A DNA stretch of 64,000 nt from Phallusia mammillata (Eukaryota), in the NCBI GenBank assembly GCA_965637545.1, contig OZ281496.1:15066001-15130000 (forward strand), written 5' to 3'. Below, piece by piece: positions 8,115-64,000 of this stretch. The notes below the pieces were generated by a model, which was given only the letters and a program-made list of their open reading frames with translations, was not told the DNA's origin and ran no database searches. Made by a program: the position numbers and the translations under genes. The number at the start of each line of letters is the position of its first letter. Within the stretch, counting starts at the first letter, position 1.

Positions 8115-8460
8115 TTAATGTGACAAACCCATATATAAGCTCAGCACTACAACGGGTGACACTAAAACGCTTCCACGTTGACTGAATGTTTTTTCACAAA
8201 CATCACATCGATGAGGTTTCTCATTGTTGTGTGTCAACATGTGTTGTTTCAAATGTTCACTAAGACCGAACCTTTTCTCGCAAATGAGACATTGATGGGA
8301 TTTCTCATTGGTATGTGTCAACATGTGTCTTTTCAAATTTCCACGTAGGCTAAATGTTTTCTCACAAACATCACATCGATGGTTTTTTTCATTGGTGTGC
8401 TTCATCATGTGTTATCAAAACTTCCACATTATTTTTTCGCATACCGATGGAATTTCTTTT
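8115..8460 (-). pseudogene. C2H2 zinc-finger gene fragment
   Basis: HTNEKNHRCDVCEKTFSLRGNLKRHMLTH repeats. Only about three fingers remain and the third breaks off. Confidence 0.8.
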
Positions 8461-22124: not shown

Positions 22125-22264
22125 ATTCTATTTGAATAAGAAAATATGTATTTTTGCTTAATAACAGTTATGTTTTGTGGCATCAAGGTTATGTGAACTG
22201 ATTGTTACCTCAAAGAAAATATTATGGAAAAGTACGAAAAAGTGAAGGTCGTTGGAAAGGGTGC
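22125..22264 (+). pseudogene. NEK8: SL-headed 5' retro-fragment of a NEK8-like kinase mRNA
   Basis: Exact SL at 22125-22140 with no GT after it, an 83-nt UTR, then ATG 22224 MEKYEKVKVVGKG(A), similar to the NEK8 N-terminus MEKYERIRVVGRGA. Truncated by a hAT end. Gene identity rests on only 13-14 residues. Confidence 0.65.
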
Positions 22265-34809: not shown

Positions 34810-34825
34810 ATTCTATTTGAATAAA
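34810..34825 (+). other. Orphan SL-like sequence (15/16)
   Basis: ATTCTATTTGAATAAA. No GT donor and no recognisable ORF follows. Confidence 0.55.
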
Positions 34826-41600: not shown

Positions 41601-42412
41601 CTGTTGTCATCCTTCTTCAGAAAAGTCGCTCCGTTCCTAGTCCAGATGTGATGGTACTGGTGCTCCCTCTTAAACCGGAGACAGTTGTTAAATCGCTCAC
41701 GGTTCTTCTTTGTCAGGCTCTCGTTGATGAAAATTTGGTTCCCAGGGGCTACGCCTTTGTTGGATTGTTTCAGCTTATACCTGTTGGAGTAAATGGAATC
41801 TCTCACTTTACGGCTCATAAATTTAGCAATGATTGCCGAACGGGGATGATCTTTAGAGACTCTCCTAAGTCGGTGAGAGATGCTAATGTCAGGCTTGGTG
41901 ATGGTGATCCCTAGCCTCTTCACAGCCGAGATTACTAATTCATCTGTGCACTCCGTTTCCGAATAGGGCAGGCCTTTGAACTCCAGGCATGGTCTTCGAC
42001 CATATTGCTCGAGATCATTTAAGTTCTCGGCATTGGAGATGGTTTGTGCTTGGAGGTCTTTAACAGCCTTTTTGAGTTCCTTATTTTCAGTTTTTAGAAG
42101 TTTCATCTCAGCCTCGTTGTTTACCAGCTGAGTCTGCTAGTTATCATATTGTTCCTGCAAGAAAGTTTGGCTCTTGCGGATCTCCCTGAGCTCATTGATT
42201 AGTTCTTTTAGGGTTGAGTCGGTGGAGATTTTACTCTCCCGAACCTCATCCCTCAGGGATTCTATCCTTTCAAGAACCACAGATTGTTCATCTTTCTTTT
42301 TCCTCAATTGAGACATTTTTCCAATAATCCTCAAGTTTTCACGAAATTTCACAGCAAATCAGATTTTTTATATTTAAATAATGTTACCTAAGCAACCTTA
42401 TTCAAATAGAAT
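38680..42412 (-). mobile_element. L2/CR1-type LINE with a complete 5' end that begins with the SL; degenerate
   Basis: ORF1 42316..41546 (coiled coil, LEQYGRRPCLEFKG, W-x-R-x-G; one in-frame TAG at 42137). ORF2 from 41499 with APE (HTNIRSL, ISET, GDFN, IDH, SDH) and RT (FLDLSKAFD, PQGS, FADDT). Stop, frameshifts and a C-terminal deletion with a ~40-bp duplication at 38785-38868. Confidence 0.9.
42397..42412 (-). other. Exact 16-nt spliced leader at the LINE 5' end
   Basis: Plus strand CTTATTCAAATAGAAT is the reverse complement of ATTCTATTTGAATAAG, 80 nt upstream of the ORF1 ATG. Confidence 0.92.
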
Positions 42413-49616: not shown

Positions 49617-50390
49617 TTGAAGATTAGACGAGAATCAAACGACTGTACAGAGAGGACAGAACCTAGAAACCCAGAAAAAATGTTTCCTGTCAAATTTCAA
49701 ACTCAATGTGAAACTGACGGAAAATGTTTCCAATGTGAAGTTTGTAAAATGGTTTTTGCCAAACAATACCTACGTGAAAGGCGCATGATGGCACATTCGG
49801 AAGAAAGACCTTTTCAGTGTAAAATAAGCGAGGTCCAATTTGAAAGGAACATCGACATGAAAGCACACTTGTTGACACACTCAGATGAAAGGTCATATAA
49901 ATGCGATGTTTGCGAAAAAGGATTTAAAAGAAAGGAAAATCTTCTCTCCTATTTGTTAGGGCATAAAGAAGAACTGTTCAAATGTGACATTTGTAAAAAG
50001 GGATTTAAGAAAAGGAGCAACCTAAAAAAACACTTGGAAATTCATTCTGGTATTAGACGACACAGGTGTGAAAACTGTGACAAACTTTTTGGTCAAAAAC
50101 GAGATTTAGAAATGCGCAAACTGATTCATACTGGTGAGAAACCTTTCCAGTGCTGTTATTGTGACAAAAGATTTAATTCAACTTCCAGCAGAGGAAGGCA
50201 TTTGAAGATTCACACTGAAGAGAGAAACTTCAAATGCGACATTTGTGAGAAAACATTTACTCAATCAGTAGGGCTCACAAAGCACATGATGACTCACACA
50301 GGTAAAAAAACCATACAACTGTGATTACTGTGAAAAATCCTTTCGATTTAAATGTTATTTGAAAAATCACGTAAGCATCCAAAAATTTTT
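49617..50390 (+). pseudogene. Intronless C2H2 zinc-finger array, partly degenerate
   Basis: About 7-8 fingers (HTGEKPFQC), two degenerate. Frameshift in an A7 run near 50303, after which one more finger is readable. Confidence 0.8.
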
Positions 50391-50868
50391 GTTAAAATGT
50401 TTTGAATTCTCAAACTTAACTAAACTTCAAAATCTCAAAGAGATACATGTGCATAAATGTATTTAAGACCTCACGCCCAAATGAAATGCCTTTTTGTGTA
50501 CTATTTTAGTCAGAATCATGAGATATTGTTTTATTATGGGTCCCCTTCCCAGAAGGGAACACATCTTGATTTCACTCTGTTTTTTTCTTTTTTCAGCCGA
50601 AGCGTTTCCATGCACTTTTGGCATGAAATCGTTGGTGGATTTGGATGAAAATTTCACAGATGGTAGATATAGTTATGTAGATGTGCCATCCGCTTCGTTT
50701 GAGTTAATAACCCCAATATTTACCCCACTAGCCCCCAAAATGTAAAACGTTTTTGCATGTTGCTGCGCACCACAAATGAAAAAATTCTGTGGAGTAACAG
50801 TATAGTAAAGGTCCCAGAGAACATGCTACTTGTGTTTGTGCATTACTTGGAGGGCCGAATGGCCTGGC

Positions 50869-53800
50869 TTCATTCTATTTGAATAAGGTAAGCATCATAC
50901 GCTGACCTTGGCACATTCAATAGAATCAAAACCCCCCCTGCATGTTTGGTGTGCTATTTTTTTGCTTGCTTTTTGTTTACTTTATTGCTTTAACGCACTA
51001 ACCCTAGGCAGCTTGCTAGTTTATCTTTGATATTTGTTCAGTTAGTGGGCGCAAAGGCGCATTGCAGGGCTTTTTGTTTCCTTCTTTTACTTTCTAGATT
51101 TACCACAAACTCTAGTGTAGGCCGCTTGGTAACCCCTTTTTTTGGTAACTTTTTTTCTCTTGTAAGTTCTTTGTAGTTTGTAGTAATTTAACTTGCCCTT
51201 AAGGCCCCCTAACCGGTAATCCCCTTCTTCGTGCTAAATACCCCGTGGTTTTTTGGTAGTAGATAGTTGATAGTGACTTAAACTTTTGTGTGTGTCCTCT
51301 GCCCCTAAGGCTTGTCGCGCCACCTAGTGCTCTATATCCCCCGGTCTCTTCCGCCCTCTTACTTTTTCACGCTTCTGCCTCCGCTCTTTAGCGGCGCCGG
51401 AAGAGGAAAACGTAAGAGCGCTCTTTTACTGCCACGGCGAGTCTCCCTGGCCTCCGCTCCCCGGCTTGTGCCTGCGAGCGGCTCCTCGGCTCTTCCCCGT
51501 GTTTTTTCCTTATCTACGTTTTTGCCAATTAAGTCTGCCGACTTAATTGTTTTTGCTCGTCCTTTGCTATCTTTCCGCCGCCTAAAGTCACAAAGCACCT
51601 CCACGCCAGTTTAAACCAAATTTTCGTCACACTAATCAAAACAGGCCACACCCCTGCCACGCCCTAAATTCTAAATCTGCCCAAAACTTAAATCAAAAAA
51701 CAAAAAGATATCCGATTAATTGTTTCTGTTATACAATTTAATATTTAAATCGCATAACCCCCTTCCGCATTTTTAATATTTAAAAAGAACTCTCCCACTT
51801 TCCCCCTTTTTTTCTGATAATTTTTCAATTTGCTGTAAACGTGCGCCCCCCCCACCTTTCAACTACAACCTACCTTATCGTTTAACAACCTTCAAAACCA
51901 CTACAAAAATGGTCCTCAACATTGAACGACACCTCTTAGAAGACAGAACGCTGCATATTACCGTAAAATCACACGAATATTATGATCTGGCTAAATTCAT
52001 CGCGCTGTTCACCCGCAACGGGATTCTTCCCTTTTATGAAGATACGCTTGAGGGAGTGCGATGTCTTAATCGAAAAAAATCGATCTTTAAAATCACTTTT
52101 AGGAACGACGTGAGAAATTGTGAGAAACATACTGAACTTTACACAAGAATCTACAGAGGCCTAACCTTTGGGAATAATGGAGACGACAAAATTACTCTTC
52201 TTGCCGAAAAACCCCCCCGGCCCAACACTAAAATAACCCTTTTTCCAGTCCCACTTGAGTTTAATGAGCGACATCTTATGCATATATGCGAAACAACACA
52301 AATCTCAGAAGAACAAACAATCCACCCCCCTTGGATTCCAATTTAGCAATAAAGGTCCAGAAAATCTTGCCCACTTTCTTGCAGGTCTTGATCAGAAAAA
52401 GACACAAATCTTAAACCAACCAATAAACCCTGACTCGGAAAAACAAAAAGAAGCTCTTCCAGATGTCTCAAATTCTTCTCCTCCTTTCAGTACCCCTCAG
52501 CCAATCAAGAACACCCCACCTGTAGAAGAGTTACTAAATTCTGCACCACCAGTGTTGCAGACTGCACCTGAAAAACCCCCTTTACCATCCAACCTGGCAC
52601 CAAAATCCGACCAAAACCTAGCTGGCAATCATCCAACTCCAAGTCCTACTCTTAGAAACCTCTTTGCAGTTGGCGCCGCCAAACAATTACAATTCGGTTC
52701 ACACTCCAGCTCCTCTAATGATGAAATTCCTCAGACGCCGTTACATACCCCCCTTCAGCCAAACAAAGATGCCCTCAAAAACGCCCAAGTTATTCCCAAC
52801 GCAACCATTAGCAGTGTAGAACATGCCTCTCCCATTGAATCTTCCCCAGACGGTAATGGAGCTTTAGTAATCAATACAGATGAATCGACAGAACAAAGCA
52901 AAGAAGAAGACAAAGACCAGGAACAAGAAGAAGACAAAGATGAAGGAACAAAACGGAAGTACAGTAGCAATAGCAGTGGAAACAACAGCTGTACCAAAAA
53001 AGAAACTAAAAAAACAAAAACTAGTACACACCCCCTCTCCCCCTTCTAATTTCCCATGGCGCACAACAATCTAAAAATTGTAACTCTGAACACAAACGGT
53101 TTCGAACGCAATTACAATCACATTGAAAATTTCATACGCAAATCGAATTCGGATATCTTTTTGTTTCAAGAAGTACACAAATTAAACAAAACTCTTTTCG
53201 AAAACTGGTCTCAAAAAAACAATTTAATTTATTTCTTTAATTCTCATTGGTCTAATCCATTCCAAAAAGAACATAAATTTGACGGCACCCTAATTTTAAT
53301 AAAACAAAGTTTTGGGCATGACATAAAATTCCATCACGAAATAATAACTGATCATCGTATCCAAAAATTAATTTTAAATTACTACAAACTACAATTTAAT
53401 AGTATGCCAATAAATCTATTTAACATTTATTTCCCTTCCGGCAACACCGCAATCAAAAAAAGAATAGAACATATCCTTAAATTAAACGATGTCTTAGAAA
53501 AACATCAAAACCAACCTCAAATCCTCGGCGGCGACTTTAATCTACTCGACGATAAAATAGACTCATTGACTTCCGCATACCAAATCAAAAGCGACACTTT
53601 AATTTGGCGTGAAACAATAAAAAGATTTAAACTTACCGACTACTTTCGCTTCTTTTATCCTCATAAAAAATTCTACACCCGAATAGGAAACAAATCTTCG
53701 ACCCGTTTAGATCGTATTTACTGCAACACATACCTCCTAAGTAAAGTATTTAAATTCGAACACCACCAAATTATCTTTTCCGATCATTGTTACGCGCCTA

Positions 53801-56800
53801 CCACGACATTTAATTTTAATCTCAACAAACAATGGGGTAAATCCACCTGGAAACTAAGCCTGGACCTATTAAATGACAAAAACTATATCGAATTAATTAA
53901 TAACCTTATTTTAGATTTCGAAAATAAAAAAGACGAAATAGATAACGCTATAACTTGGTGGGAAAAGCTAAAACGCAAAATTAAAAAGAAATCGATCACT
54001 TTCGCGATTGAGAAAAGGAAAAACGACAAAAAAGCCCTCGAAGTAAACCAAAACGAACTCGACGACCTCGTAGAAAAAATGGATCCAAATAACCTAGAAG
54101 CTAATATAAAGTTCGTTGCGCTTAAAAAGAAACTAAAATCCCAACAAGAAAAAGAAATGAAAGGTGCGCAAATAAGAGCCCGTGTTAAACAAGTTACAAA
54201 CGAAGAACGACCTGACAAAATATTCTTTAGAGTCGAAAATATCAAATAAGAAGCAACCAGTATAAGAACGCTAAATATTAACAATAGAATAGAAACGGAC
54301 CACGACCAAATCATAAATGAGGTTCATAAATTTTACGCAAACTTATGGCAAAATAAAAGTAAAACGACCGCAAACGCACAAAACTATTTCCTTCGTAATA
54401 TTAAATTTGACGCAAATGACGACCTAAGCCAAATTTCCCCCTTCACTTTGAGCGAAATCGAAATGTCACTAAACGCAATCAATCTAAATTCGTCACCCGG
54501 TCAAGACGGCATCCCAGCCGAATTTTATAAAAAATTCTGGCCCCTTTAAAAACACAATTTTTACGAATTGACACACAACATATACCTTCAAAAAGAACTC
54601 CCCAACTCTTGCAAAAATGCGATCGTTAAATTAATTCCAAAAAAACATGACAAAACCCTTATCAAAAATTGGCGACCAATATCCCTGTTGAATTCGGACT
54701 ACAAAATAATAAGCAAAACTATAGCAAACCGCTTACAAAACGAACTCAGCAATAAAATCGCAATTGAACAAAAATGCGGCCTCCCAAAAAGATATATACA
54801 GCATATTCATTATAACATTAAAGCTATCATCGAATACGCAAAACAAAAATCGTCCCCTTTGGCCCTCGTTTTAATAGATATAGAAAAAGCGTTTGACACC
54901 CTTAACCACGAATTTATTTTCAAAGTCCTGGAAAAACTACGAACTAACGAATACACCCTGAATTGGATTAAAATACTATACAAAAATATCACAAGCCAAG
55001 TTAATGGCAAACTGACGGAAGAAATCAAAATTCTACGCGGCGTAAGGCAGGGTTGTGGCCTGTCAATGCTCTTATATGTAGCCATGACTGAAGCCTTAAT
55101 TCAAACAACAAACAACAATTCGAAAATAAATGGAATAAAAATTGGCCCGATTGAAACAAAAATACAACAATATGCGTATGACTCAACCTTTGTAATTTCA
55201 AACCAACCCTCTCTGAACGAAATTTTTGAACTAATGAAACTTTACGAATTGGCGTCTGGACAAAAAATTAACAAAAGCAAAACTGAAATTATCGCTTTTT
55301 CCCAAAACCTAAGATCTGATATTACGCGAATTTATCCAAATTTTATAAAAAAACAATGTTAAAATTTTAGGCATTCAATGCTCAATCCACAATTGGCAAA
55401 CAAACAAGAACTGGAAAGAATTTATTAATCACAGTCGAAACATTGTATCCAAATTTATAAATAGAAACCTTTCCCTTTTCGGCAAAATATCTGTAATAAA
55501 TACCTTGATAATTCCCCGAATTTTATTCTTAGCTAGGGCTTTCCCACCGCAACAAAAACACTTAAAAGACCTAAATTATATTATCTATCAATTCCTTTGG
55601 CATCCCAACAAAATTGAACAATTATCTAGGAAAAAACTTATCGCGCAAATTAACAACGGAGGAATTAAAATGTCAGATTTAAAAACTAAAATCGACGCAA
55701 CGCAATTAGAAAAATTACGTGACCTCATTGTACCCGAAAAACACCCTGAAATTTGGCAGCAATGGGCTCTCTATAATTTAGGCTTCAAACTGCGACAAAT
55801 TAAACCTACCATTTTCGATCACAGTAGACCTACAGCATGGAAAACAAACCCCGAATGGCAAAACATTTTCGAGTTATATAAAACTTTAATCGACTTAAAT
55901 AACGAATTTAATTGGACCAAAGCAAAATTAAGACACTTCTACTACGAACTGATAAAGAAAAAAGAAATTATAACCAGCCCAACTCCCAACCCCGACTTTA
56001 AATGGCAAAACGCCCTTTTATAACAAAAAGGAATAAAACGATATTTTAATAATTACGACCGCCAATACGCTTACCTCACCATCCATAACGCATTTAAATG
56101 GGGCGACTTCTTTAAAGAAAAGAAAATTTTTACGCTTAAATCCGGCAGATCCCGACTTCTTTACTGCAAATTTTGTAGGAAAAATACCGACAATATTTCT
56201 CACCTTTTAACGGAATGCATAATATCTCAAAAAATATTAAACGACATAAAATATATTCTTTCCAGTCAGTTCCAAATTTCATTCGACATTAATCCAAATT
56301 TAACTCTTTTGAACTTATTTGATAAAAACATCCCCTTAGTTGTTTTAAAAATGATTGCAATTTGGCGAACGCAAATTATTAAACAAAAAATCAAATTCGA
56401 TATCAAAAACGAATATTTAGAATTCCCCGAACCCTTTGTAAAAAGAACGGCAGCAAAAATTTTGGACATATTATTTGAACAACTAAAACACTTTACAAAC
56501 TCCCTTGACGATACAAACTTTGAACTAATCTTTAATATCAACCCTAAAAACCTTACTATAAATACTTCGGTTATGGCAACATAACCTGTTAAAAAAAAAA
56601 TGTACGTTCTAATGCGCAAGCATAGAAATCATATATTTATAACCCATTTAATCCCTTTAACTACAACCTTGCGACTTTCAAATCGCAATTTTGTAAACGC
56701 TCTTTCTCTCATCTCTGTTTCTTCGTTTCGCTACGCGCTATTTTTGCGCTTGCCCTCTTTCATGTATTTTGTAATATGTTTTTTTGTGTATTATTTCCTT

Positions 56801-56953
56801 ATCTTGTTTTTCATTAATTTTATTGACAATTATTTTTTGCTCCCTGTGAGTTAAGAGCAGCTCCCATAGGAAGGAGACGACACTAACAAGACCGGTTGGT
56901 CGTCACTTGTTGAGGCGAGGTGGGGCCTCTACATAGCAAAAAAAAAAAAAAAA
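50869..56953 (+). mobile_element. L1-clade Tx1-type LINE 1, full length, degenerate
   Basis: TSD ATGGCCTGGC (50859-68 and 56953-62), A16 tail. ORF1 51909..53049 (shifted). ORF2 53056..56584 with APE (TLNTNG, LFQE, GGDFN, RLDR, SDH), RT (KAFD, GVRQGCGLS, YAYD in place of YADD) and a C-terminal CKFC..HLLTEC. Stops and frameshifts. Confidence 0.93.
50872..50926 (+). ncRNA. SL RNA gene-like cassette (SL exon + GTAAG donor + intron-like segment)
   Basis: Exact SL 50872-50887, then GTAAG and CATCATACGCTGACCTTGGCAC. Folds as AAGGT/ACCTT plus AGC/GCT, and the SL exon pairs with ATTCAATAGAAT 50915-50926. Confidence 0.8.
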
Positions 56954-57035
56954 TGGCCTGGCGCGCCTGACCCTTATACAGACATAAAAACCTTGATCGG
57001 GTTCGTCCCCGGGAGTGTCCTGGGTTCGAACCCCG
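56953..57035 (+). pseudogene. tRNA-like sequence (Leu/Ser-type body), 3' part; the 5' part lies at ~50846..50868
   Basis: Removing LINE 1 rejoins GGAGGGCCGAATGGCCTGGC (A-box/D-arm-like) to GCGCCTGA..TCGGG (anticodon-stem-like pair around a ~27-nt insert), a long variable arm and B-box GGTTCGAACC (57023-57032). Acceptor stem and anticodon loop are degenerate. Confidence 0.55.
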
Positions 57036-57056
57036 TGAAAAAAAAAATTTGCACAT

Positions 57057-60000
57057 TGCATGGTGTGTTTTCTATCTTGCATGTTACTGATGTACAACCT
57101 TAGAGCTTTGTGGCTAGGCAGGCAGTTTATTGAGTTTGTTTAGTTCTTTTTGTCAGTTAGTGCGTATAGGCGCACCCTAGCTTTGTTCTGTTTGTTTGTT
57201 TGTTTTATTACTTTTCGCTCTTTCTATCCTGACCGAGTAACCCACAAACAGTAGTTGACCGCTATTCTGCCCCTTTAGTTCTTGGTCTTGACTAAGTGCC
57301 TCCTAAAGGCCACCTAGTGTAACCTATAACTTGTAACTTCTTTTTTTTTGTAACTTATCAGGTTTTTTGCCCTTAAGGCTTTTCGAATCTTAACGGTTTG
57401 TCTGGTAAACGCCACCTAGCGAGCCTTTAAGGCATTTACTGTAACTCCCTCTAGTGTACTTTATCTTTATTACGTCATAAAACTTTGTTGCACCTTTAAC
57501 TCCCCCCGGTACCTCCCCTCTCTACCGATACCCCGCCGCCTCCGCCTTTATTGTCGGAGTACTTGCGTATCGCGGCTGCGTATCGTTAGAGTGCCTTTTT
57601 CCTTGTTTGTTTATTTACTTTACGGCAAGTTCCACTGACCACCCCAGGCGTGTGCCTCCGGGTGCTTATTGGGACTTCCCCTTGTAGCAATTAACGCCTT
57701 GTGGTCTTAATTGCCTTTTGCTGCCGCAAACGCCGAAGTCCCGTTTCAATTTTTTTTCTGAAGGGACTCCCCCTTTGATTCGGGGTTTTCCCTATTTAGT
57801 TACTTCTTTTTTGATTTTTTTGTGCTTGTTTGGGGAATCCCCGCTCAAAGATCCACAGCAAGTTAGGTACACACCCGCATTTGCCGCAAATTAGGTACAC
57901 TCACACATTAGCAAAATTTAAATACATATAGAAATCAAACTTACTTACACATAAGCCGCACCCTTGTAGAGCTTACTCCTTTTTTCCACTATCGGAGTCA
58001 TCTTTTTCTTATACGATGGGTCTTGACAAGTACTTTGATGAGTTTCGCACTCTGCATATCCAGGTGATGACGCAGGAATATTTCCACTTCGATGGCTTTA
58101 TGACAATGTTCGATGATGGTTTCCCTTTAGATAAGTATGCAGACATGGTCGTAGCCATACGAAATGTAAACAGGAAGAACTCTATTTTCAAGATGACTTT
58201 TGCGGAGAAATATACTCACGAACTTTCGTCCTCCAAAGCCTACCACCCGGCTTACGTTGTTTCCAGTGCCAGCAGAATTCGCAGCAAAACAATTCTCCAT
58301 TGCAGCTTCTAAACTGGACTGGGGAATATATAACAAACACATTTCTCACGCACAGGCGAATGGATAATATCCCATATGTAGCTACACTAATCAGACACGA
58401 GATACAAATCGCGAAACCTGGGGAATCCTTTGGCCCCACTTGCAGAAATTGCATGCAGCGGGGCCACTGGACGAACCAGTGTCATCGCCAAAAGAAGTGT
58501 AAGTTATGTGGGGATAGGAACCACAAGGCGAGAGATTGTCCATTCGAGTCTAGCATTGCAACCACAGATGAGGAACCAGATGATCGAGACAGAGCACAAT
58601 ATAAGAGAGATTACCCGAAATTGCCACAAAACCAAAAGAAATCAACACCTAAAGGTTCCATGCCAGATAAATCTACCCCAGATGATCTTTCCCAAGAAAT
58701 ACATCAGATAGAGGTACAACAAGAGAAGCAAATCCAGGATTTGAACAAAAACATTGAAGTTGAAGAACCCACTCCTCTTGAATTAAACTCTTCCATCTTG
58801 GCTCCAACCTCTCCACGTACGTCCAACAAATCTTTCGAGGCAGCAAACAAATCACCACAAGCTGCTAGTAAGTCTCTATCAGAATCTACACAAACCATGG
58901 ATGTAGATTCTTCAAACAAAAATCCAAACTCTCTGTCAGCCTCCTCATCTTATGCCACTCCTCTCACTCAACGACGACGACTTCCATCTATTCCAACTGA
59001 TCGTCCGACATCTCACAGAAATGCCCCATCCACTCCACACCCAAACAAACAAGCCCTCCCGGTGTCCAGAGTTGTTAGCTTCCACTCTGGTGATTCTTTA
59101 CCTCCGCTTGAAGAGTCTTCTATTACATCTACATCTGACTCGGAAGACGGCTTTGATTCAGACTCTCTCCAAAAAGAGGAAGAAGAAAAAGAAGAAGATG
59201 GAAAAGAAGAAGACGAAAAAGAAGAAGATCAGGGAGAACCCTTGTTAGTAGAGAAAGAGAATTCAGGCTTAGACTTAGCCAATCTCTTCAAACCAAACAG
59301 TACAAAAACTAATACCAAGAGAAGCAACAGTAGCTCGGGCGAGAAACCCAGAAAGAAAAAGAAACCAACCCAACACAAGTAAAGACAGTTTCTTCTCGAA
59401 CAGCTACAAAACACTTTAGTAAACTTTTACAAACCTCCATCCTTTTGCAAAGATGGCGAATATTACCTCAATTAACATAAACGGACTTAACCGTAAATTA
59501 AATAACTTGCAAACTTTCGCAGAAAAAGATGACTCTGATATTTGACCTATTCAGGAAATTCATGTGATCTCAAAACCTAACCTTTTGAATTGGACGAACA
59601 AAAACAATTTTGACCTTTTTTTCAATTCAATTTGGGAAAATGACTCAAACAGTAACCAAAAAAACAAATTCGACGGTACTCTGATTTAAATTGGGAAAAA
59701 CTTTACCTAAAATAAAACTATTTTTCATGAAATCCTGATCGACTCGAAAATCCAAAAAATATATTTTGAGTTAAACTACCAAACCTACCATATCTTTAAC
59801 ATATATCTACCATCCGGACCAAAAAATAGAAACGAAAGAAAAACTCTAATTGATACCTTGTCTAAATCAATCACCAAAAATCCCAATGTGTTCACAATCA
59901 TTGCTGGCGACTTTAACTTTATCGAAAATGAAATTGACTCGCTACATAGAAATTTAAGAAACGGATGCGATCTTAAAGCCTGGAAGCGCCTGACTGCTGA

Positions 60001-63000
60001 ACATAGCATAGTAGACACTTTCCGCCTTTTTCAGCCTAGAAAAAAATGCTTTACGCGTATTACCAAAAATTCATCAACGAGAATAGACCGCTTTTACTCG
60101 ACATAAAATTAAACTTTTTTCGAATAAATCTTAATCTAAATAAAAGATGGGGAAAAACCTCCTGGAAACTAAACCTAACTTTATTACAAGACCGAAGTAC
60201 AATACGTTAATTAAAAGCCTGATCCAGGAACTAGAAAACGAGAAAGAATCCTACCACTCGATTTTCGAGTGGTGGGATTCCCTCAAACAAAAAATTAGAA
60301 AGAAATCAATCTCGTTTTCAATTGAGCGAAAAAACGCCGAAAAACTTGAGAAAGCAAAAATGCAAAAAGAATTCGAAGCCCTTATGGCCACGATGTCACC
60401 CAACAATCCCGGACCTACCTTAAAACTTCTAGATCTCCAAAAAAAGATAAAGCTAAGCAACGAGCAAAATTTGAACGGCGCTAAAATAAGAGCAAGAATC
60501 AAAGACTTTTGCGACAACGAGAAACCGTACAAGCCTTTCTTTAAAACTGAACAAACAAAACAGGAAAGTACTAGCATCAGAGGTTTAAACATTAATGGCC
60601 ATTTTGAAACAAACCCTGATAAAATAATACACGAAGTTCATCGTTTTTATCAAAACCTTTGGCAAGTGAATAATAGTACGGACACAAACGTCCAAAAATT
60701 CTTCATCTCGCAAGTTGAACCCTACCCGCCGCAATCAACAGACGCATCTTTTACGCTAAAAGAACTCGAAGTAGCAAAGAATTTAATGAACAAAAACTCA
60801 TCCCCTGGCGACGACGGTCCCCCGGTAGAATTTTACAATCACTTTTGGCCCTTAAAAATGCGCAAGTTAAACTTATTCCAAAGAAGCAGGATAAGACGTA
60901 TCTAAAGAATTGGCGCCCAATTTCCCTTTTGAACGCCGATTACAAAATTATAAGAAAAACAGTTTCAATGCGACTTCAAAAAGAACTTAACGAAAAAATA
61001 GCTATAGAACAAAACTGCGGTCTAAACCAGTGGTTCTCAAACTTTTTTGTGTTGCGACGCCTCTGGAAAAGTTTTCTGGACTTGCGACTCACCAGCACAT
61101 AAAAGTTAATGAGGGAACTTATCAATAAACAGTTAACTAACTGTTTTTCCACAAATTATAAAACTGCACTCAACAGTCAACACTTTCAGTGCATCCGGCA
61201 ATCACGTGCGGGCTTTTGTTAATTGTTTCAATTATTGCGCACAATTACATTGTCTTGTCTGCTGCATGGCCTCAACAGCATCAATAACGAATTACAATAA
61301 AAGTAATGTTTCAACTTACGCACAATATAAACTGCTGCACAAAAATTTACTGCTGCAACTCATGCACAGCAACTACTTCAAACTTTGCTAACAATTATAC
61401 GTTATAACTACCTCAAGCCTTTGTTACATTGTTATGAAGCAAGACTCCGTTCATATAATCAAGTTTAATGCCCGCCAAGCGTCGCCCCAGACACGTGCCT
61501 ATCACGCACTTGCTGCTTGTACTGTTTGGTCGCGACGTACATTGACGGACAGCCACATTTTTGATGAAAAACTTTTGAGGTAAATTTACGCCAATCCGCA
61601 CTGTACGCAAAAAGCAGTTGGACGCAGATATACGTCAACCGCACTGAAACCTCATTTAATATGAGATAAACTGAGTTTAAACACGAAATGGAAATATTCT
61701 GCGACGCCCTTGGAAAATTGAAACGACGCACCAGGGCGTCGCGACGCACAGTTTGAGAACCACTGGTCTAAACAACCGTTTTATTCAACATATCCATTAC
61801 AACCTCCAATCAGCAATGGAGTCTAGTCATACAAAACATACTCCTTTGGCTTTCATGATGGTCGATATAGAAAAGGCCTTTGACACTGTCGATCACGACT
61901 TTGTGCATCAAATCCTACAAGCCTTAAATATTAATAAATACACTAGAAAATGGGTAAAAATTTTATACAAAAACATAACTAGCAAAATTAACGTCAATGG
62001 TACCACAACAGAAATAATACAGATAAAAAGAGGAGTTCGACAAGGGTGCGGCTTATCCATGTTGCTTTACGTGGCTGTGAGTCAAGCCCTCATCAAAGCA
62101 GTAAATAACAATAAAAACATATACGGTTTTAAATTTGGAAAACTCGAAACAAAAATACAGCAGTATGCTGATGATTCGACTTTCATAATTGCGGACAAAC
62201 AATCAATTCCAGAAATTTTCAAACTCATGGATTTATACAAAAAAGCAACAGGACAAAAAATTAATACAACAAAAACTGAACTACTCCCAATTTCGAAAAA
62301 CCTCGTTAGCGAATTAAATTTTATCTACCCCGATTTTGTAAAACAAACGTCAAAATATTAGGAATCAAATGTAAATCAAGTTGTTTCGGTGTGCGAGACA
62401 ACTGGGCACCGATATTACGGCATGCGAAACACATAACCAATACTTTCGCATCTCGGAAACTTTCTTTTACCGGTAAAATCTCAATAATAAACACGCTAAT
62501 CTTTCCCAAAATTTTATTTACCGCAAGAGTAGTCCAACCATCCCACATCTATATAAAAGAACTAAATTATACGATTTATCAATTTTTCTGGCACCCCAAA
62601 AAAATAGAACAAATGAAACGCGTTAAATTAACATCCTCCAAAGAAAAAGGTGGCCTAAAACTCCCTGATTTGGAAACCAAAATAAAAGCGCTATACTTAG
62701 AAAAACTGCGGGACCTAATTACCGTGGAAAATATCGTAGAAATCTGGCAACGATGGGCCATTTACAATTTAGCCACTAAAATAAAACAAATTAAACCCCA
62801 CATTATTTGATAATACCAAACCAAATGCGTGGAAACCCAACCAGAATTGGAAAAAAAATTACGAAACTTACCTAAATTTAATAGAAATTAATAATGAATT
62901 AAATTGGCAAAAATCCAAATTACGACATTTTTATTACGAATTAATCAAACAAATAGAAGTAGATAGTACTCCAAGCAACCTAACCGATTTTAAATGGAAA

Positions 63001-63855
63001 AAGGCCTTGTTCCTCCAAACAGGAATAAGGCTTTTTTTCAACAATAGAGAACGGCGAGTTGCTTAACGGCAAGTTGCTTACCTTACCTCGCACAAAGCCT
63101 TCAAATGGGGCGATTTTGACCGCTCCAGAAACGCTTTTCATCTAAAAAATAAACAAAACAGAATCATGCGCTGTAAGCTATGCAAAAATAAAAACGACAA
63201 TATAGAACATCTGTTCTTAAATTGTCCAATAAATAACAAAATTGCTAATTACCTCGACCAAATTTTATTTGATAAAGTACAAACGCATCTCCCAAAAAAC
63301 CCAAACCTGATTTTATATAACTACTACGACTTGGAAACCCCAATGTGGTTAGTAAAGTTAGTTTCAATTTGGCGCGTCAAAGTCATTAAAGAAAAAGAAA
63401 ACTTAGACTATAATAACGATTACGTAAAAAACTCGGAATCCTTCGCAAGACGTGTCTCCCAAAAAATCTTTGCGACTTTCAAATCTCAATTGGAAGTATT
63501 TACACAAAAATTTGGAAACCAATACGTTGAAATGAAATTTGGCCTCGGCATGGACCAATTTACAATAAACGCTGCCACGTAGAGCCAAACAAAATCTTGT
63601 AATATACTTATTATTGTGTGTGTATCTTACTTCCATTGCAAAATGTTTTTCGCAATATGTTACACTTTAGTTCATTATTATCTTCGTTTACAACGTCTCT
63701 CATTTAACATGTTACGTTGTTACATTAACTTAGTTTACTGCCTAGCCTATTTTTAAGTTGTTCCTATTTTTAACTGGAGACGACATGATAATTTTATTAT
63801 CGGTCGGTCGTCACATGTTGAGGCGGGGAGGGGCCTCTACAAAAATAGAAAAAAA
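57057..63855 (+). mobile_element. L1-clade Tx1-type LINE 2, full length, degenerate, a diverged relative of LINE 1
   Basis: Flanked by A(n)TTT(T)GCACAT on both sides (57038-57056 and 63849-63866). ORF1 58016..59382 with two CCHC knuckles. ORF2 ~59453..63582 with APE, RT (QYADDST) and CKLC..EHLFLNC. Many shifts. Confidence 0.92.
61028..61765. mobile_element. hAT MITE inserted in the LINE 2 RT
   Basis: TIRs CAGTGGTTCTCAAACT / AGTTTGAGAACCACTG, TSD GTCTAAAC. The RT frame resumes after it. Confidence 0.93.
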
Positions 63856-64000
63856 TTTTTGCACATGGCAGAAAAAAGCAAGAGAAAAAAAAATTTTGCA
63901 CATGGGTGTTAACAGCCTTATGACGTCAGATGTGTTAACAAATGTTGCTAAAAACACCTCTAGTGGCTAGAAATTTAAACATTGGCCGATTTTGAAAAAA

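What the first reader, a model, noticed from the sequence alone, without database searches (positions are those of the whole stretch)
50859..56962. Tx1 LINE with an unspliced SL-RNA-gene cassette at its head, inside the target-site duplication
Seen: TSD ATGGCCTGGC lies 3 nt upstream of the SL and again directly after the A16 tail, so SL exon + GTAAG donor + intron-like segment were inserted together with the LINE. The LINE-like 5' UTR starts at about 50939 (TGCATG..GTGTG), homologous to the start of LINE 2, which lacks the cassette. Known: U6/L1 chimeras form in mammals, and Ciona SL genes are thought to carry cis-elements within the transcribed region. Inference: either a one-off SL-RNA/LINE chimera, or a LINE family that has captured an SL gene as promoter, cap source or splice donor for its own ORFs.
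Basis: partly seen in the sequence, partly recalled or inferred. Interest (0 to 1): 0.88.

Follow-up and report, generated by a model that had tools for sequence, protein, structure and literature searches.

The report
LINE with transduced spliced-leader gene head
A decayed jumping gene (LINE) in this sea-squirt genome carries an unspliced copy of the host's spliced-leader RNA gene at its front, and because related LINEs in other tunicates sit inside spliced-leader genes, this head is most likely a piece of the family's home gene carried along rather than a one-off accident.

Summary
ATGGCCTGGC (50859-50868 and 56953-56962) brackets TTC, the exact 16-nt ascidian spliced leader (SL), a GTAAGC donor, 30 nt of SL-RNA-like intron with an Sm-like GACCTTGG, a 21-nt linker, a roughly 6-kb APE+RT LINE and a 16-A run. 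Independent runs contain the same junctions. The cassette sequence is about 100-600 times deeper than the LINE body, so it matches the multi-copy SL RNA genes.

The cassette is probably not a one-off. In marine-metagenome and assembly contigs from other tunicates, relatives of this LINE lie inside SL RNA genes. L013 has both halves of the gene as flanks, and L010 sits in an SL gene array. Five of eight relatives found by protein alone start with their host's own SL plus an unspliced donor, including the other tunicate SL type.

My best reading (0.6) is that the family lives in or just behind SL RNA genes and is transcribed from the SL promoter. This copy would then be an off-target insertion of such a co-transcript, a 5' transduction. 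A U6/L1-like template switch (0.2) is not excluded for this copy. Tx1 membership, expression and any promoter role were not tested. The scan had already noted SL-gene-lodged LINEs elsewhere in this genome (s1-382227, s1-382231, s1-382245).

The parts
50534..50868 (.). Host high-copy dispersed repeat (SINE/MITE-like) into which LINE 1 inserted. It continues after the insertion at 56963-57047 with a tRNA-like GGTTCGAACCCC box and an A10 run.
   Evidence: Contig depth is 1e3-1e6 against about 7/70/700 for single-copy sequence in X4/X6/X8. Sequence.
50859..50868 (+). Left target-site duplication ATGGCCTGGC
   Evidence: identical 10-mer at 56953-56962.
50869..50871 (+). Three extra bases (TTC) between the duplication and SL position 1; origin unknown (untemplated, or the SL gene's -3..-1).
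50872..50887 (+). Exact 16-nt ascidian spliced-leader exon
   Evidence: the SL sequence is as given for Ciona in PMC7986045.
50888..50917 (+). Unspliced donor GTAAGC plus an SL-RNA intron-like segment up to RNA position 46. Sm-like GACCTTGG lies at 50904-50911, the same place as Ciona's AGCUUUGG and the CCTTGG of other tunicate SL genes.
   Evidence: The bin 50869-50935 is about 100-600 times deeper than the LINE body.
50918..50938 (+). 21-nt linker CAATAGAATCAAAACCCCCCC. TTCAATAGAAT (50916-50926) is complementary to SL nt 1-12 apart from one missing base. It could be SL-gene 3' flank or a LINE-specific head.
   Evidence: The X4 contig start at 50891 implies identity with other copies through about 50920. 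The pairing is not better than shuffles.
50939..51908 (+). LINE 1 5' UTR; its start TGCATGTTTGGTGTG resembles the LINE 2 start
51909..53049 (+). ORF1, in two overlapping frames (51909-52346 and 52255-53049), so frameshifted. It has no Pfam hit; ORF1 of LINE 2 and of relatives has a CCHC knuckle.
53056..56416 (+). ORF2 with APE endonuclease and reverse transcriptase. It is broken by an in-frame stop at 54247-54249, further in-frame stops between there and 54568, and one frameshift near 55345-55409.
   Evidence: Pfam Exo_endo_phos 2e-14 and RVT_1 4.5e-29; tblastn against P0012 and P0015.
56417..56937 (+). 3' UTR; the last ~45 nt (…GGTCGTCACTTGTTGAGGCGAGGTGGGGCCTCTACATAGC) is conserved with LINE 2
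   Evidence: 83% over 59 nt with 63801-63855.
56938..56953 (+). Poly(A) tail (16 A, the last one shared with the duplication)
56953..56962 (+). Right target-site duplication ATGGCCTGGC
57058..63855 (+). LINE 2, a sister family without the SL cassette. It is more decayed and is flanked by (A)nTTTGCACAT.

Best explanation
LINE 1 is a dead copy of an L1/Tx1-group (APE+RT) LINE. It belongs to a tunicate clade whose members live in or directly behind spliced-leader RNA genes. A master copy in such a gene is transcribed from the SL gene's own upstream promoter. The RNA therefore starts at SL position 1 and runs, unspliced, through the donor and the SL-RNA body into the LINE. Normally this RNA goes back into another SL gene. 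Here it was reverse-transcribed at an unrelated site inside a SINE-like repeat, so the SL-gene segment became visible inside the 10-bp target-site duplication. This is a 5' transduction of the home gene.

Shown:
- The single-event structure of this copy.
- That the cassette equals a multi-copy sequence in this genome.
- That relatives are inserted in SL genes and carry host-matched SL heads.

Inferred:
- That this copy's own master sat behind an SL gene.
- That transcription started at the SL promoter.
- Any benefit of the head (promoter, cap or leader for translation, or homology for 5' joining).
For: 1. One event: a 10-bp duplication brackets the cassette, the LINE and the A-run. The junctions are present in independent runs.
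2. The cassette is the host SL gene. Bin 50869-50935 has depth 3040/43989/126870 against 6.6/~110/~1200 in the next bin for X4/X6/X8, and no well-supported variant letters are listed in it. Its layout matches tunicate SL genes: SL16, GTAAG, an Sm-like CCTTGG, then about 6 nt.
3. Relatives are true SL-gene residents. L013 reads SL promoter flank, SL, GTAAGTATCGGCTCC, an intact 7-kb LINE, then GAGCGTCTTTTTTACACAAAC…, which is the exact 3' part and flank of the intact gene in L009 and L020. L010 holds an SL gene array whose third gene is broken after GTAAGTTGACG by an intact LINE. That LINE's RT is 42% identical to LINE 1's.
4. In those relatives the SL part is 3'-truncated, keeping only the 5' 27-31 nt. 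Template switching onto a mature SL RNA cannot produce that.
5. The head travels with the element outside the promoter context. L005 has it behind another LINE's 3' end. L023 has it in a different repeated target.
6. Among relatives found by protein only, 5 of 8 with a readable 5' region start with SL plus a donor. L023 and L025 carry the Ciona-type SL. L026, L029 and L030 carry the other tunicate SL, GATTGGAGTATTTGGTTGTATTAAG.
7. All of these fall in one RT clade together with LINE 1 and LINE 2 (100/98, with a sister group at 91/91).
8. Unchecked notes from this scan report an intact LINE fused to an SL gene promoter, and a LINE family inserting just behind SL genes, in this same genome.
Against: - No on-target copy of LINE 1's own family was seen by me. 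At 85% identity or more the LINE body is about single-copy, and this genome is absent from the protein collections.
- Unlike its relatives, this cassette holds the whole ~46-nt SL RNA, which is exactly what a template switch would give.
- The closest relative, LINE 2, has no cassette.
- The SL gene's own flanks in this species were not obtained. It is therefore unknown whether TTC and the 21-nt linker are gene flank.
- No RNA evidence exists; all holders are contigs, and their RNA label is a guess.
Confidence: 0.6

Rival explanations
1. This is a one-off template-switch chimera of the U6/L1 type. On reaching the 5' end of a LINE 1 RNA, the reverse transcriptase jumped onto the 3' end of a mature SL RNA, copied it to its cap, and the product was joined to the target.
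For: The cassette spans the full ~46-nt SL RNA by analogy with Ciona. SL RNA is abundant and its genes are multi-copy. LINE 2, the sister family, lacks the cassette. snRNA/L1 chimeras made by template switching are documented (cited in PMC4494074).
Against: It leaves the 21 nt between RNA position 46 and the LINE start unexplained, including an 11-nt stretch complementary to the SL. SL heads recur across the clade in forms that template switching cannot make, namely 3'-truncated SL parts and genuine gene insertions. Earlier notes, which I did not check, report on-target copies in this genome.
Confidence: 0.2
2. The SL gene segment is a heritable, self-sufficient part of the element, acting as an internal promoter, cap or leader module. 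Under this reading the family does not depend on sitting in SL genes, and the cassette is kept at every insertion.
For: The head is found away from SL promoter flanks in L005, L023 and this copy. In the L013/L012/L017 group the head differs from the native gene: the loop TT is replaced by ATATGCTGCC and the stem is extended with one compensatory change, pairing at p 0.002-0.006. This suggests inheritance through the RNA. I recall that Yeats et al. 2010 argued for cis-elements inside the Ciona SL transcribed region; I could not read that paper.
Against: L013 and L010 sit precisely in SL genes with native promoter flanks. LINE 2 and L022 do without a head. snRNA-type genes use upstream promoters (PMC4494074). 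No promoter test exists.
Confidence: 0.12
3. The structure arose in two steps or is an artefact. Either an SL RNA retropseudogene was already at the site and attracted the LINE, or the assembly joined the sequences wrongly.
For: The family may prefer SL-gene-like 3' ends. LINE 2 sits at TTTGCACAT, which resembles TTGGCACAT.
Against: One duplication brackets the cassette and the LINE together. Contigs from three other runs cross the junctions.
Confidence: 0.03

Closest known systems
SL-gene-specific non-LTR retrotransposons: SLACS/CZAR/CRE of trypanosomatids and NeSL-1 of nematodes
   Same: These are LINEs whose home is the multi-copy spliced-leader RNA gene, in sense orientation behind the SL promoter. 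PMC4640811 lists spliced-leader exons among LINE targets and describes NeSL as SL-specific. From my own knowledge, SLACS transcription starts at SL +1.
   Different: Those elements carry a restriction-like endonuclease and belong to early-branching clades. They cut inside the SL exon. The elements here have an APE endonuclease of the L1/Tx1 group. They insert in the intron-like part (relatives) or behind the RNA (this family, inferred), and their hosts are chordates.
Target-specific Tx1-clade LINEs, e.g. Keno in U2 snRNA genes
   Same: APE-type LINEs of the L1 group that home to small nuclear RNA genes. Co-transcription with the target has been proposed to supply the promoter and to sharpen targeting (PMC4494074).
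   Different: The target here is the SL RNA gene. Placement inside the Tx1 clade was not tested, because no reference sequences were available.
snRNA/L1 template-switch chimeras (U6/L1 and similar)
   Same: A small nuclear RNA sequence lies at the 5' end of a LINE sequence, inside a single target-site duplication.
   Different: Those chimeras are sporadic and always include the small RNA's 3' end. In this clade the heads recur, are often 3'-truncated, and on-target copies are real gene insertions.
5' transduction by LINEs and co-transcribed elements (L1 5' transduction, SVA-MAST2, R2 with 28S rRNA)
   Same: Upstream flank of the source copy is transcribed from an outside promoter and carried to the new site (SVA and R2 examples are cited in PMC4494074).
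   Different: The transduced piece here is a functional-looking trans-splicing donor RNA gene with an unspliced 5' splice site.

Membership tests
Non-LTR retrotransposon, L1/Tx1 group | APE-type endonuclease followed by a reverse transcriptase in ORF2 | tested here: met
   Exo_endo_phos 2.1e-14 and RVT_1 4.5e-29 on LINE 1 pieces; colinear with 1124-1151-aa ORF2s.
Non-LTR retrotransposon, L1/Tx1 group | Poly(A) tail and target-site duplication from target-primed reverse transcription | tested here: met
   16-A run and a 10-bp duplication.
Non-LTR retrotransposon, L1/Tx1 group | ORF2 closest to L1-group ORF2p rather than to R2, CR1 or others | tested here: met
   The clade member P0015 matches human LINE-1 ORF2p over residues 4-853 at E 2e-70, against R2 at 4e-22. 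LINE 1 falls in the same 100/98 clade. This was tested on the relative, not on the broken LINE 1 ORF2 itself.
Tx1 clade proper | RT phylogeny groups it with Xenopus Tx1L, Keno and other reference Tx1 families, apart from L1 | not tested
   No named Tx1 reference could be obtained. Database hits carry no such names.
SL-RNA-gene-specific LINEs (function-defined class: SLACS/CZAR/NeSL-like) | Copies lie at one fixed site of SL RNA genes, with both flanks being SL gene | tested here: not met
   This copy lies in a SINE-like repeat. The feature is met for relatives L013 and L010. For LINE 1's own family in this genome there are only unchecked notes.
SL-RNA-gene-specific LINEs (function-defined class: SLACS/CZAR/NeSL-like) | Restriction-like endonuclease (CRE/NeSL clades) | tested here: not met
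   An APE domain is present instead. It is an analogue of those clades, not a member.
snRNA/LINE template-switch chimera | The small RNA part ends at the RNA's mature 3' end, directly joined to the LINE part | tested here: inconclusive
   The cassette covers RNA positions 1-46 by analogy with Ciona, but 21 more nt precede the LINE start. The species' SL RNA 3' end is unknown.
snRNA/LINE template-switch chimera | Sporadic: other copies and related families lack it | tested here: not met
   SL-plus-donor heads occur in 5 of 8 protein-ascertained relatives and in the L010 and L013 groups. The census within this family was not possible.
SL RNA gene (is the cassette a bona fide copy?) | SL exon, GT donor, Sm-like site and short RNA length, matching the genome's multi-copy genes | tested here: met
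   Exact SL, GTAAGC, and GACCTTGG at RNA positions 33-40. Depth about 100-600 times the LINE body, with no strongly supported variant letters. No Rfam family reaches threshold.

The most novel reading that the evidence does not exclude
A tunicate-wide clade of APE-type L1/Tx1-group LINEs is tied to spliced-leader RNA genes. Its members insert into or just behind these genes and are transcribed from the SL promoter. They pass on, through their RNA, a 5' head made of the host's own SL exon plus an unspliced donor, and the head tracks the host's SL type (Ciona-type or GATTGGAG…-type). The LINE mRNA would thus look like a trans-spliced host message without being spliced. This would be a chordate, APE-endonuclease counterpart of SLACS/CZAR/NeSL. 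I found no description of it in the searchable literature.
Probability: 0.45. Interest if true: 0.75.

Novelty: new variant of a known kind. Interest (0 to 1): 0.6.

Why it matters
SL RNA genes are known homes for LINEs only in trypanosomatids and nematodes, and there only for elements with a restriction-like endonuclease. A chordate clade of L1/Tx1-type elements doing the same would be a clear case of convergence on a single niche: a strong promoter in a multi-copy, expendable gene. It would also explain how LINEs get expressed in genomes where most mRNAs receive a leader, because the element is born with the leader and its cap. It gives a concrete source for dispersed SL-plus-donor sequences ('orphan SL genes') in ascidian genomes. 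[quoted passage not shown] Practically, SL-plus-GT matches in tunicate genomes should not be counted as SL RNA genes without checking for a LINE behind them.

Tried and rejected
- **Same-genome copies by protein:** the endonuclease piece found only 30-34% identical proteins. The window's own ORFs are not in the collection, so no census of this family was possible. L001 and L002 had no SL.
- **Read laying (single call, 42):** it gave depth and junction contigs, but the loose ends and pieces at the cassette were cut from the output. The SL gene's own flanks and any empty allele therefore stayed unseen.
- **Ciona SL RNA full sequence:** Vandenberghe 2001 and Yeats 2010 are not held. The SLIDR supplements give only the Sm motif.
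- **Rfam:** no family reaches threshold in the window.
- **The search of earlier findings by sequence:** blank.
- **Anti-SL hairpin as a functional feature of this copy:** the whole 67-nt cassette folds better than dinucleotide-preserving shuffles (-14.7 kcal/mol, z -3.5, mononucleotide shuffles of the 75-nt head: z -2.6). However, pairing between the SL-gene part and the following 40 nt is no better than shuffles (p 0.63). I rejected it as evidence. Only the L013/L012/L017 heads pass (p 0.002-0.006).
- **Paralogous empty site in the window:** none.
- **Names or taxa for clade assignment from the protein atlas:** none.
- **Bacterial promoter/terminator scan:** irrelevant for this genome.
- **Expression:** all holders are contigs whose RNA label is a guess.
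- **Literature searches** for a tunicate SL-gene LINE found nothing.
Full report
**What is there**

The window contains no N. At 50859-50868 lies ATGGCCTGGC, followed by TTC and the exact 16-nt ascidian spliced leader ATTCTATTTGAATAAG (50872-50887). Next come GTAAGC and 24 further nt of an SL-RNA-like body, which includes GACCTTGG at RNA positions 33-40. A 21-nt linker (CAATAGAATCAAAACCCCCCC) follows. From 50939 the sequence is a LINE 5' UTR beginning TGCATGTTTGGTGTG.

The element ends in a 16-A run at 56938-56953, followed directly by ATGGCCTGGC again. ORF1 runs 51909-53049 and is frameshifted. ORF2 runs 53056-56416 and has an APE endonuclease and a reverse transcriptase. It is broken by in-frame stops and one frameshift. 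This is a dead copy.

LINE 2 starts about 95 bp downstream (57058) with TGCATGGTGTG. It has no SL and carries its own duplication around TTTGCACAT. It shares the last ~59 nt of the 3' UTR with LINE 1 at 83% identity. It is LINE 1's sister in the RT tree at 59% identity, so it is a different family.

**Is it real, and is the cassette the host's SL gene?**

Contigs from four public runs of the same organism were laid on 50400-52400.
- An X1 contig spans flank, duplication, SL and UTR (50661-51102) with two differences.
- X4 and X8 contigs cross the cassette-to-LINE junction.
- The upstream flank is a very high-copy repeat.
- The LINE body is about single-copy at 85% identity or more.
- The bin holding the cassette (50869-50935) is about 100-600 times deeper than the next bin. 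No strongly supported variant letters are listed in it.

So the cassette equals a sequence present in hundreds of copies. That is the order reported for Ciona SL RNA genes, about 670 (PMC7986045; PMC6836712). The Ciona SL RNA is 46 nt with the Sm-like motif AGCUUUGG. The cassette places GACCTTGG at the equivalent position, six nt before RNA position 46. The X4 contig starts at 50891. With 31-letter words, this implies identity with other copies through about 50920, which is RNA position 49. This is an inference from how contigs break, not a direct reading.

**Relatives**

The window's genome is not in the protein collections; the best hits to the endonuclease piece are only 30-34% identical. 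A scan of metagenome contigs for SL+GTAAG gave 19 loci from other tunicates.

Several are plain SL RNA genes. They consist of the SL, GTAAGT, a short hairpin with a CCTTGG-like site and a T-run (L009, L020, L015, L010, L014, L016, L018).

Seven loci have the SL-gene 5' part joined to LINE sequence on the same strand; in five of them an APE+RT LINE could be read.
- **L013** is decisive. Its first 67 nt are identical to the upstream flank of the intact genes in L009 and L020. Then come the SL, GTAAGTATCGGCTCC, and an intact LINE (ORF1 398 aa, ORF2 1148 aa). After the LINE's end comes GAGCGTCTTTTTTACACAAACAATCATAAATAGGGAAATG, the exact 3' part and flank of the same gene. This is an insertion inside an SL RNA gene.
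- **L010** holds an SL gene array. Its third gene is broken after GTAAGTTGACG by an intact LINE. That LINE's RT is 42% identical to LINE 1's.
- **L005** shows the same head behind another LINE's 3' end plus 18 nt. The head can therefore travel with the element.

**Protein-ascertained relatives give an unbiased sample**

I searched with L010's ORF2 and fetched contigs for clade members. This yielded eight elements with a readable 5' region.

| Locus | Head |
|---|---|
| L023 | SL + GTAAGTT, 280 nt before ORF1 |
| L025 | 15 of 16 SL bases + GTAAGTTGACGTC |
| L026, L029, L030 | (GA)TTGGAGTATTTGGTTG(T/A)TATTAAG + GTAT |
| L022, L027, L002 | no SL |

The head on L026, L029 and L030 is the 25-nt 'Chordata 1' spliced leader listed in PMC3795323. 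The head therefore follows the host's own leader type. The L030 contig runs exactly from that leader to a poly(A) tail.

All these elements, together with LINE 1 and LINE 2, form one RT clade (100/98). The L013/L012/L017 group is its sister (91/91). P0015 matches human L1 ORF2p over 850 residues (E 2e-70). This places the clade in the L1/Tx1 group. Membership of Tx1 proper was not tested.

**Mechanism**

The simplest account covering all of this is as follows. The clade resides in SL RNA genes. Resident copies are transcribed from the SL gene promoter. The transcript carries the SL exon, the unspliced donor and whatever part of the gene precedes the insertion site.

When such an RNA integrates elsewhere, the gene segment appears inside the duplication as a 5' transduction. 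In relatives the segment is the 5' 27-31 nt of the SL RNA. Template switching onto a mature SL RNA, which starts at the RNA's 3' end, cannot produce that.

In LINE 1 the segment covers the whole ~46-nt RNA. This fits a family that inserts just behind the RNA-coding part, as unchecked notes of this scan say for this genome (s1-382245, s1-382227, s1-382231). It equally fits a template switch. For this one copy I therefore put 0.6 on transduction and 0.2 on a template-switch chimera. A further 0.12 goes to a self-sufficient captured head, and a small remainder to two-step or artefact scenarios.

**What is not shown**

None of the following has been demonstrated:
- expression of this or any family member; all runs are contigs with a guessed RNA label;
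- the transcription start;
- the cap type;
- any splicing from the retained donor;
- any promoter activity of the head;
- an empty allele;
- on-target copies of LINE 1's own family.

The 'anti-SL' complementarity (TTCAATAGAAT against SL nt 1-12) exists, and the cassette folds better than shuffles. However, pairing of the gene part with the following 40 nt is not better than shuffled sequence (p 0.63). Only the L013/L012/L017 heads have a significant, partly compensated hairpin.

**Novelty**

LINEs specific for SL genes are known from trypanosomatids and nematodes. Tx1-clade LINEs specific for U2 and other small RNA genes are also known (PMC4640811; PMC4494074). Four literature searches found no tunicate SL-gene LINE. 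The key paper on Ciona SL genes (Yeats 2010) could not be read, and Repbase is not searchable here. I therefore rate this a new variant of a known kind.

The scan had already noted SL-gene-lodged LINEs on other pieces of this genome. The additions here are the off-target copy as a record of the transcript's 5' end, and evidence from other tunicates that the link is clade-wide and tracks the host's leader.

Noticed in passing
window 57039-57056 and 63850-63906: LINE 2 sits at (A)nTTTGCACAT. Right after its 3' copy of that motif lies a 25-nt A-rich fragment (63869-63893), again flanked by TTTTGCACATGG. That makes two retroposition events at one motif. The motif resembles the SL gene's 3' end TTGGCACAT (50908-50916), so it may be a near-cognate target.
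   Followed up: partly
window 22125-22140 (+) and 42397-42412 (-): Two more exact SL copies, each joined directly to downstream sequence without the SL RNA intron part. One heads a retrocopy with an ATG about 90 nt downstream. The other heads a minus-strand LINE whose ORF1 begins about 90 nt downstream. Both are the trans-spliced form, unlike the unspliced cassette of LINE 1.
   Followed up: partly
window 34810-34825 (+): SL with one mismatch (…AATAAA) followed by AT-rich sequence; its nature was not examined.
   Followed up: no
L026:2-25, L029:403-428, L030:1-22: LINE relatives from other samples start with the second tunicate spliced leader (GATTGGAGTATTTGGTTGTATTAAG, 'Chordata 1' in PMC3795323) followed by a GTAT donor. 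The host species are unknown (Logan runs SRR25569779 and SRR25569769; ENA ERZ6863655).
   Followed up: partly
L022:1940-2037 and 8121-8176; L023:1742-1838 and 8119-8178: Two related LINEs share the same upstream (94%) and downstream (84%) flanks, so they hit one repeated target. Read across the insertion, the target looks like a hammerhead-ribozyme core (CTGTAGTGTCCTAAC | TAAGGACGAAAC), with the LINE in the stem II loop. This was judged by eye only. Earlier notes report SL-hammerhead repeats in the window's genome.
   Followed up: no
L009:149-195, L010:1126-1175, L014, L016, L018, L015: Intact tunicate SL RNA genes in marine metagenomes end in a run of 6-8 T right after a ~41-nt RNA body. This looks like an RNA polymerase III terminator or a U-rich Sm/3' end signal.
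   Followed up: no
L005:2440-2516 (oriented with the SL on +): A LINE 3' end (…GAATAAACAAAAATC), then 18 nt, then the SL cassette and a LINE 5' end. This is a head-to-tail pair in which the second element keeps the SL head without the SL promoter flank.
   Followed up: partly
window 49617-50324 (+): An ORF with repeated C2H2 zinc-finger-like motifs lies just upstream of the repeat that hosts LINE 1.
   Followed up: no
runs X1, X2, X25, X26 (study P1) versus X21-X24, X27, X28: Small contig sets guessed to be RNA hold 77-86% of the words of 50869-51400 in one study and none in two others. If they are RNA, the locus is expressed in some samples only. If they are DNA, this says nothing about expression.
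   Followed up: no
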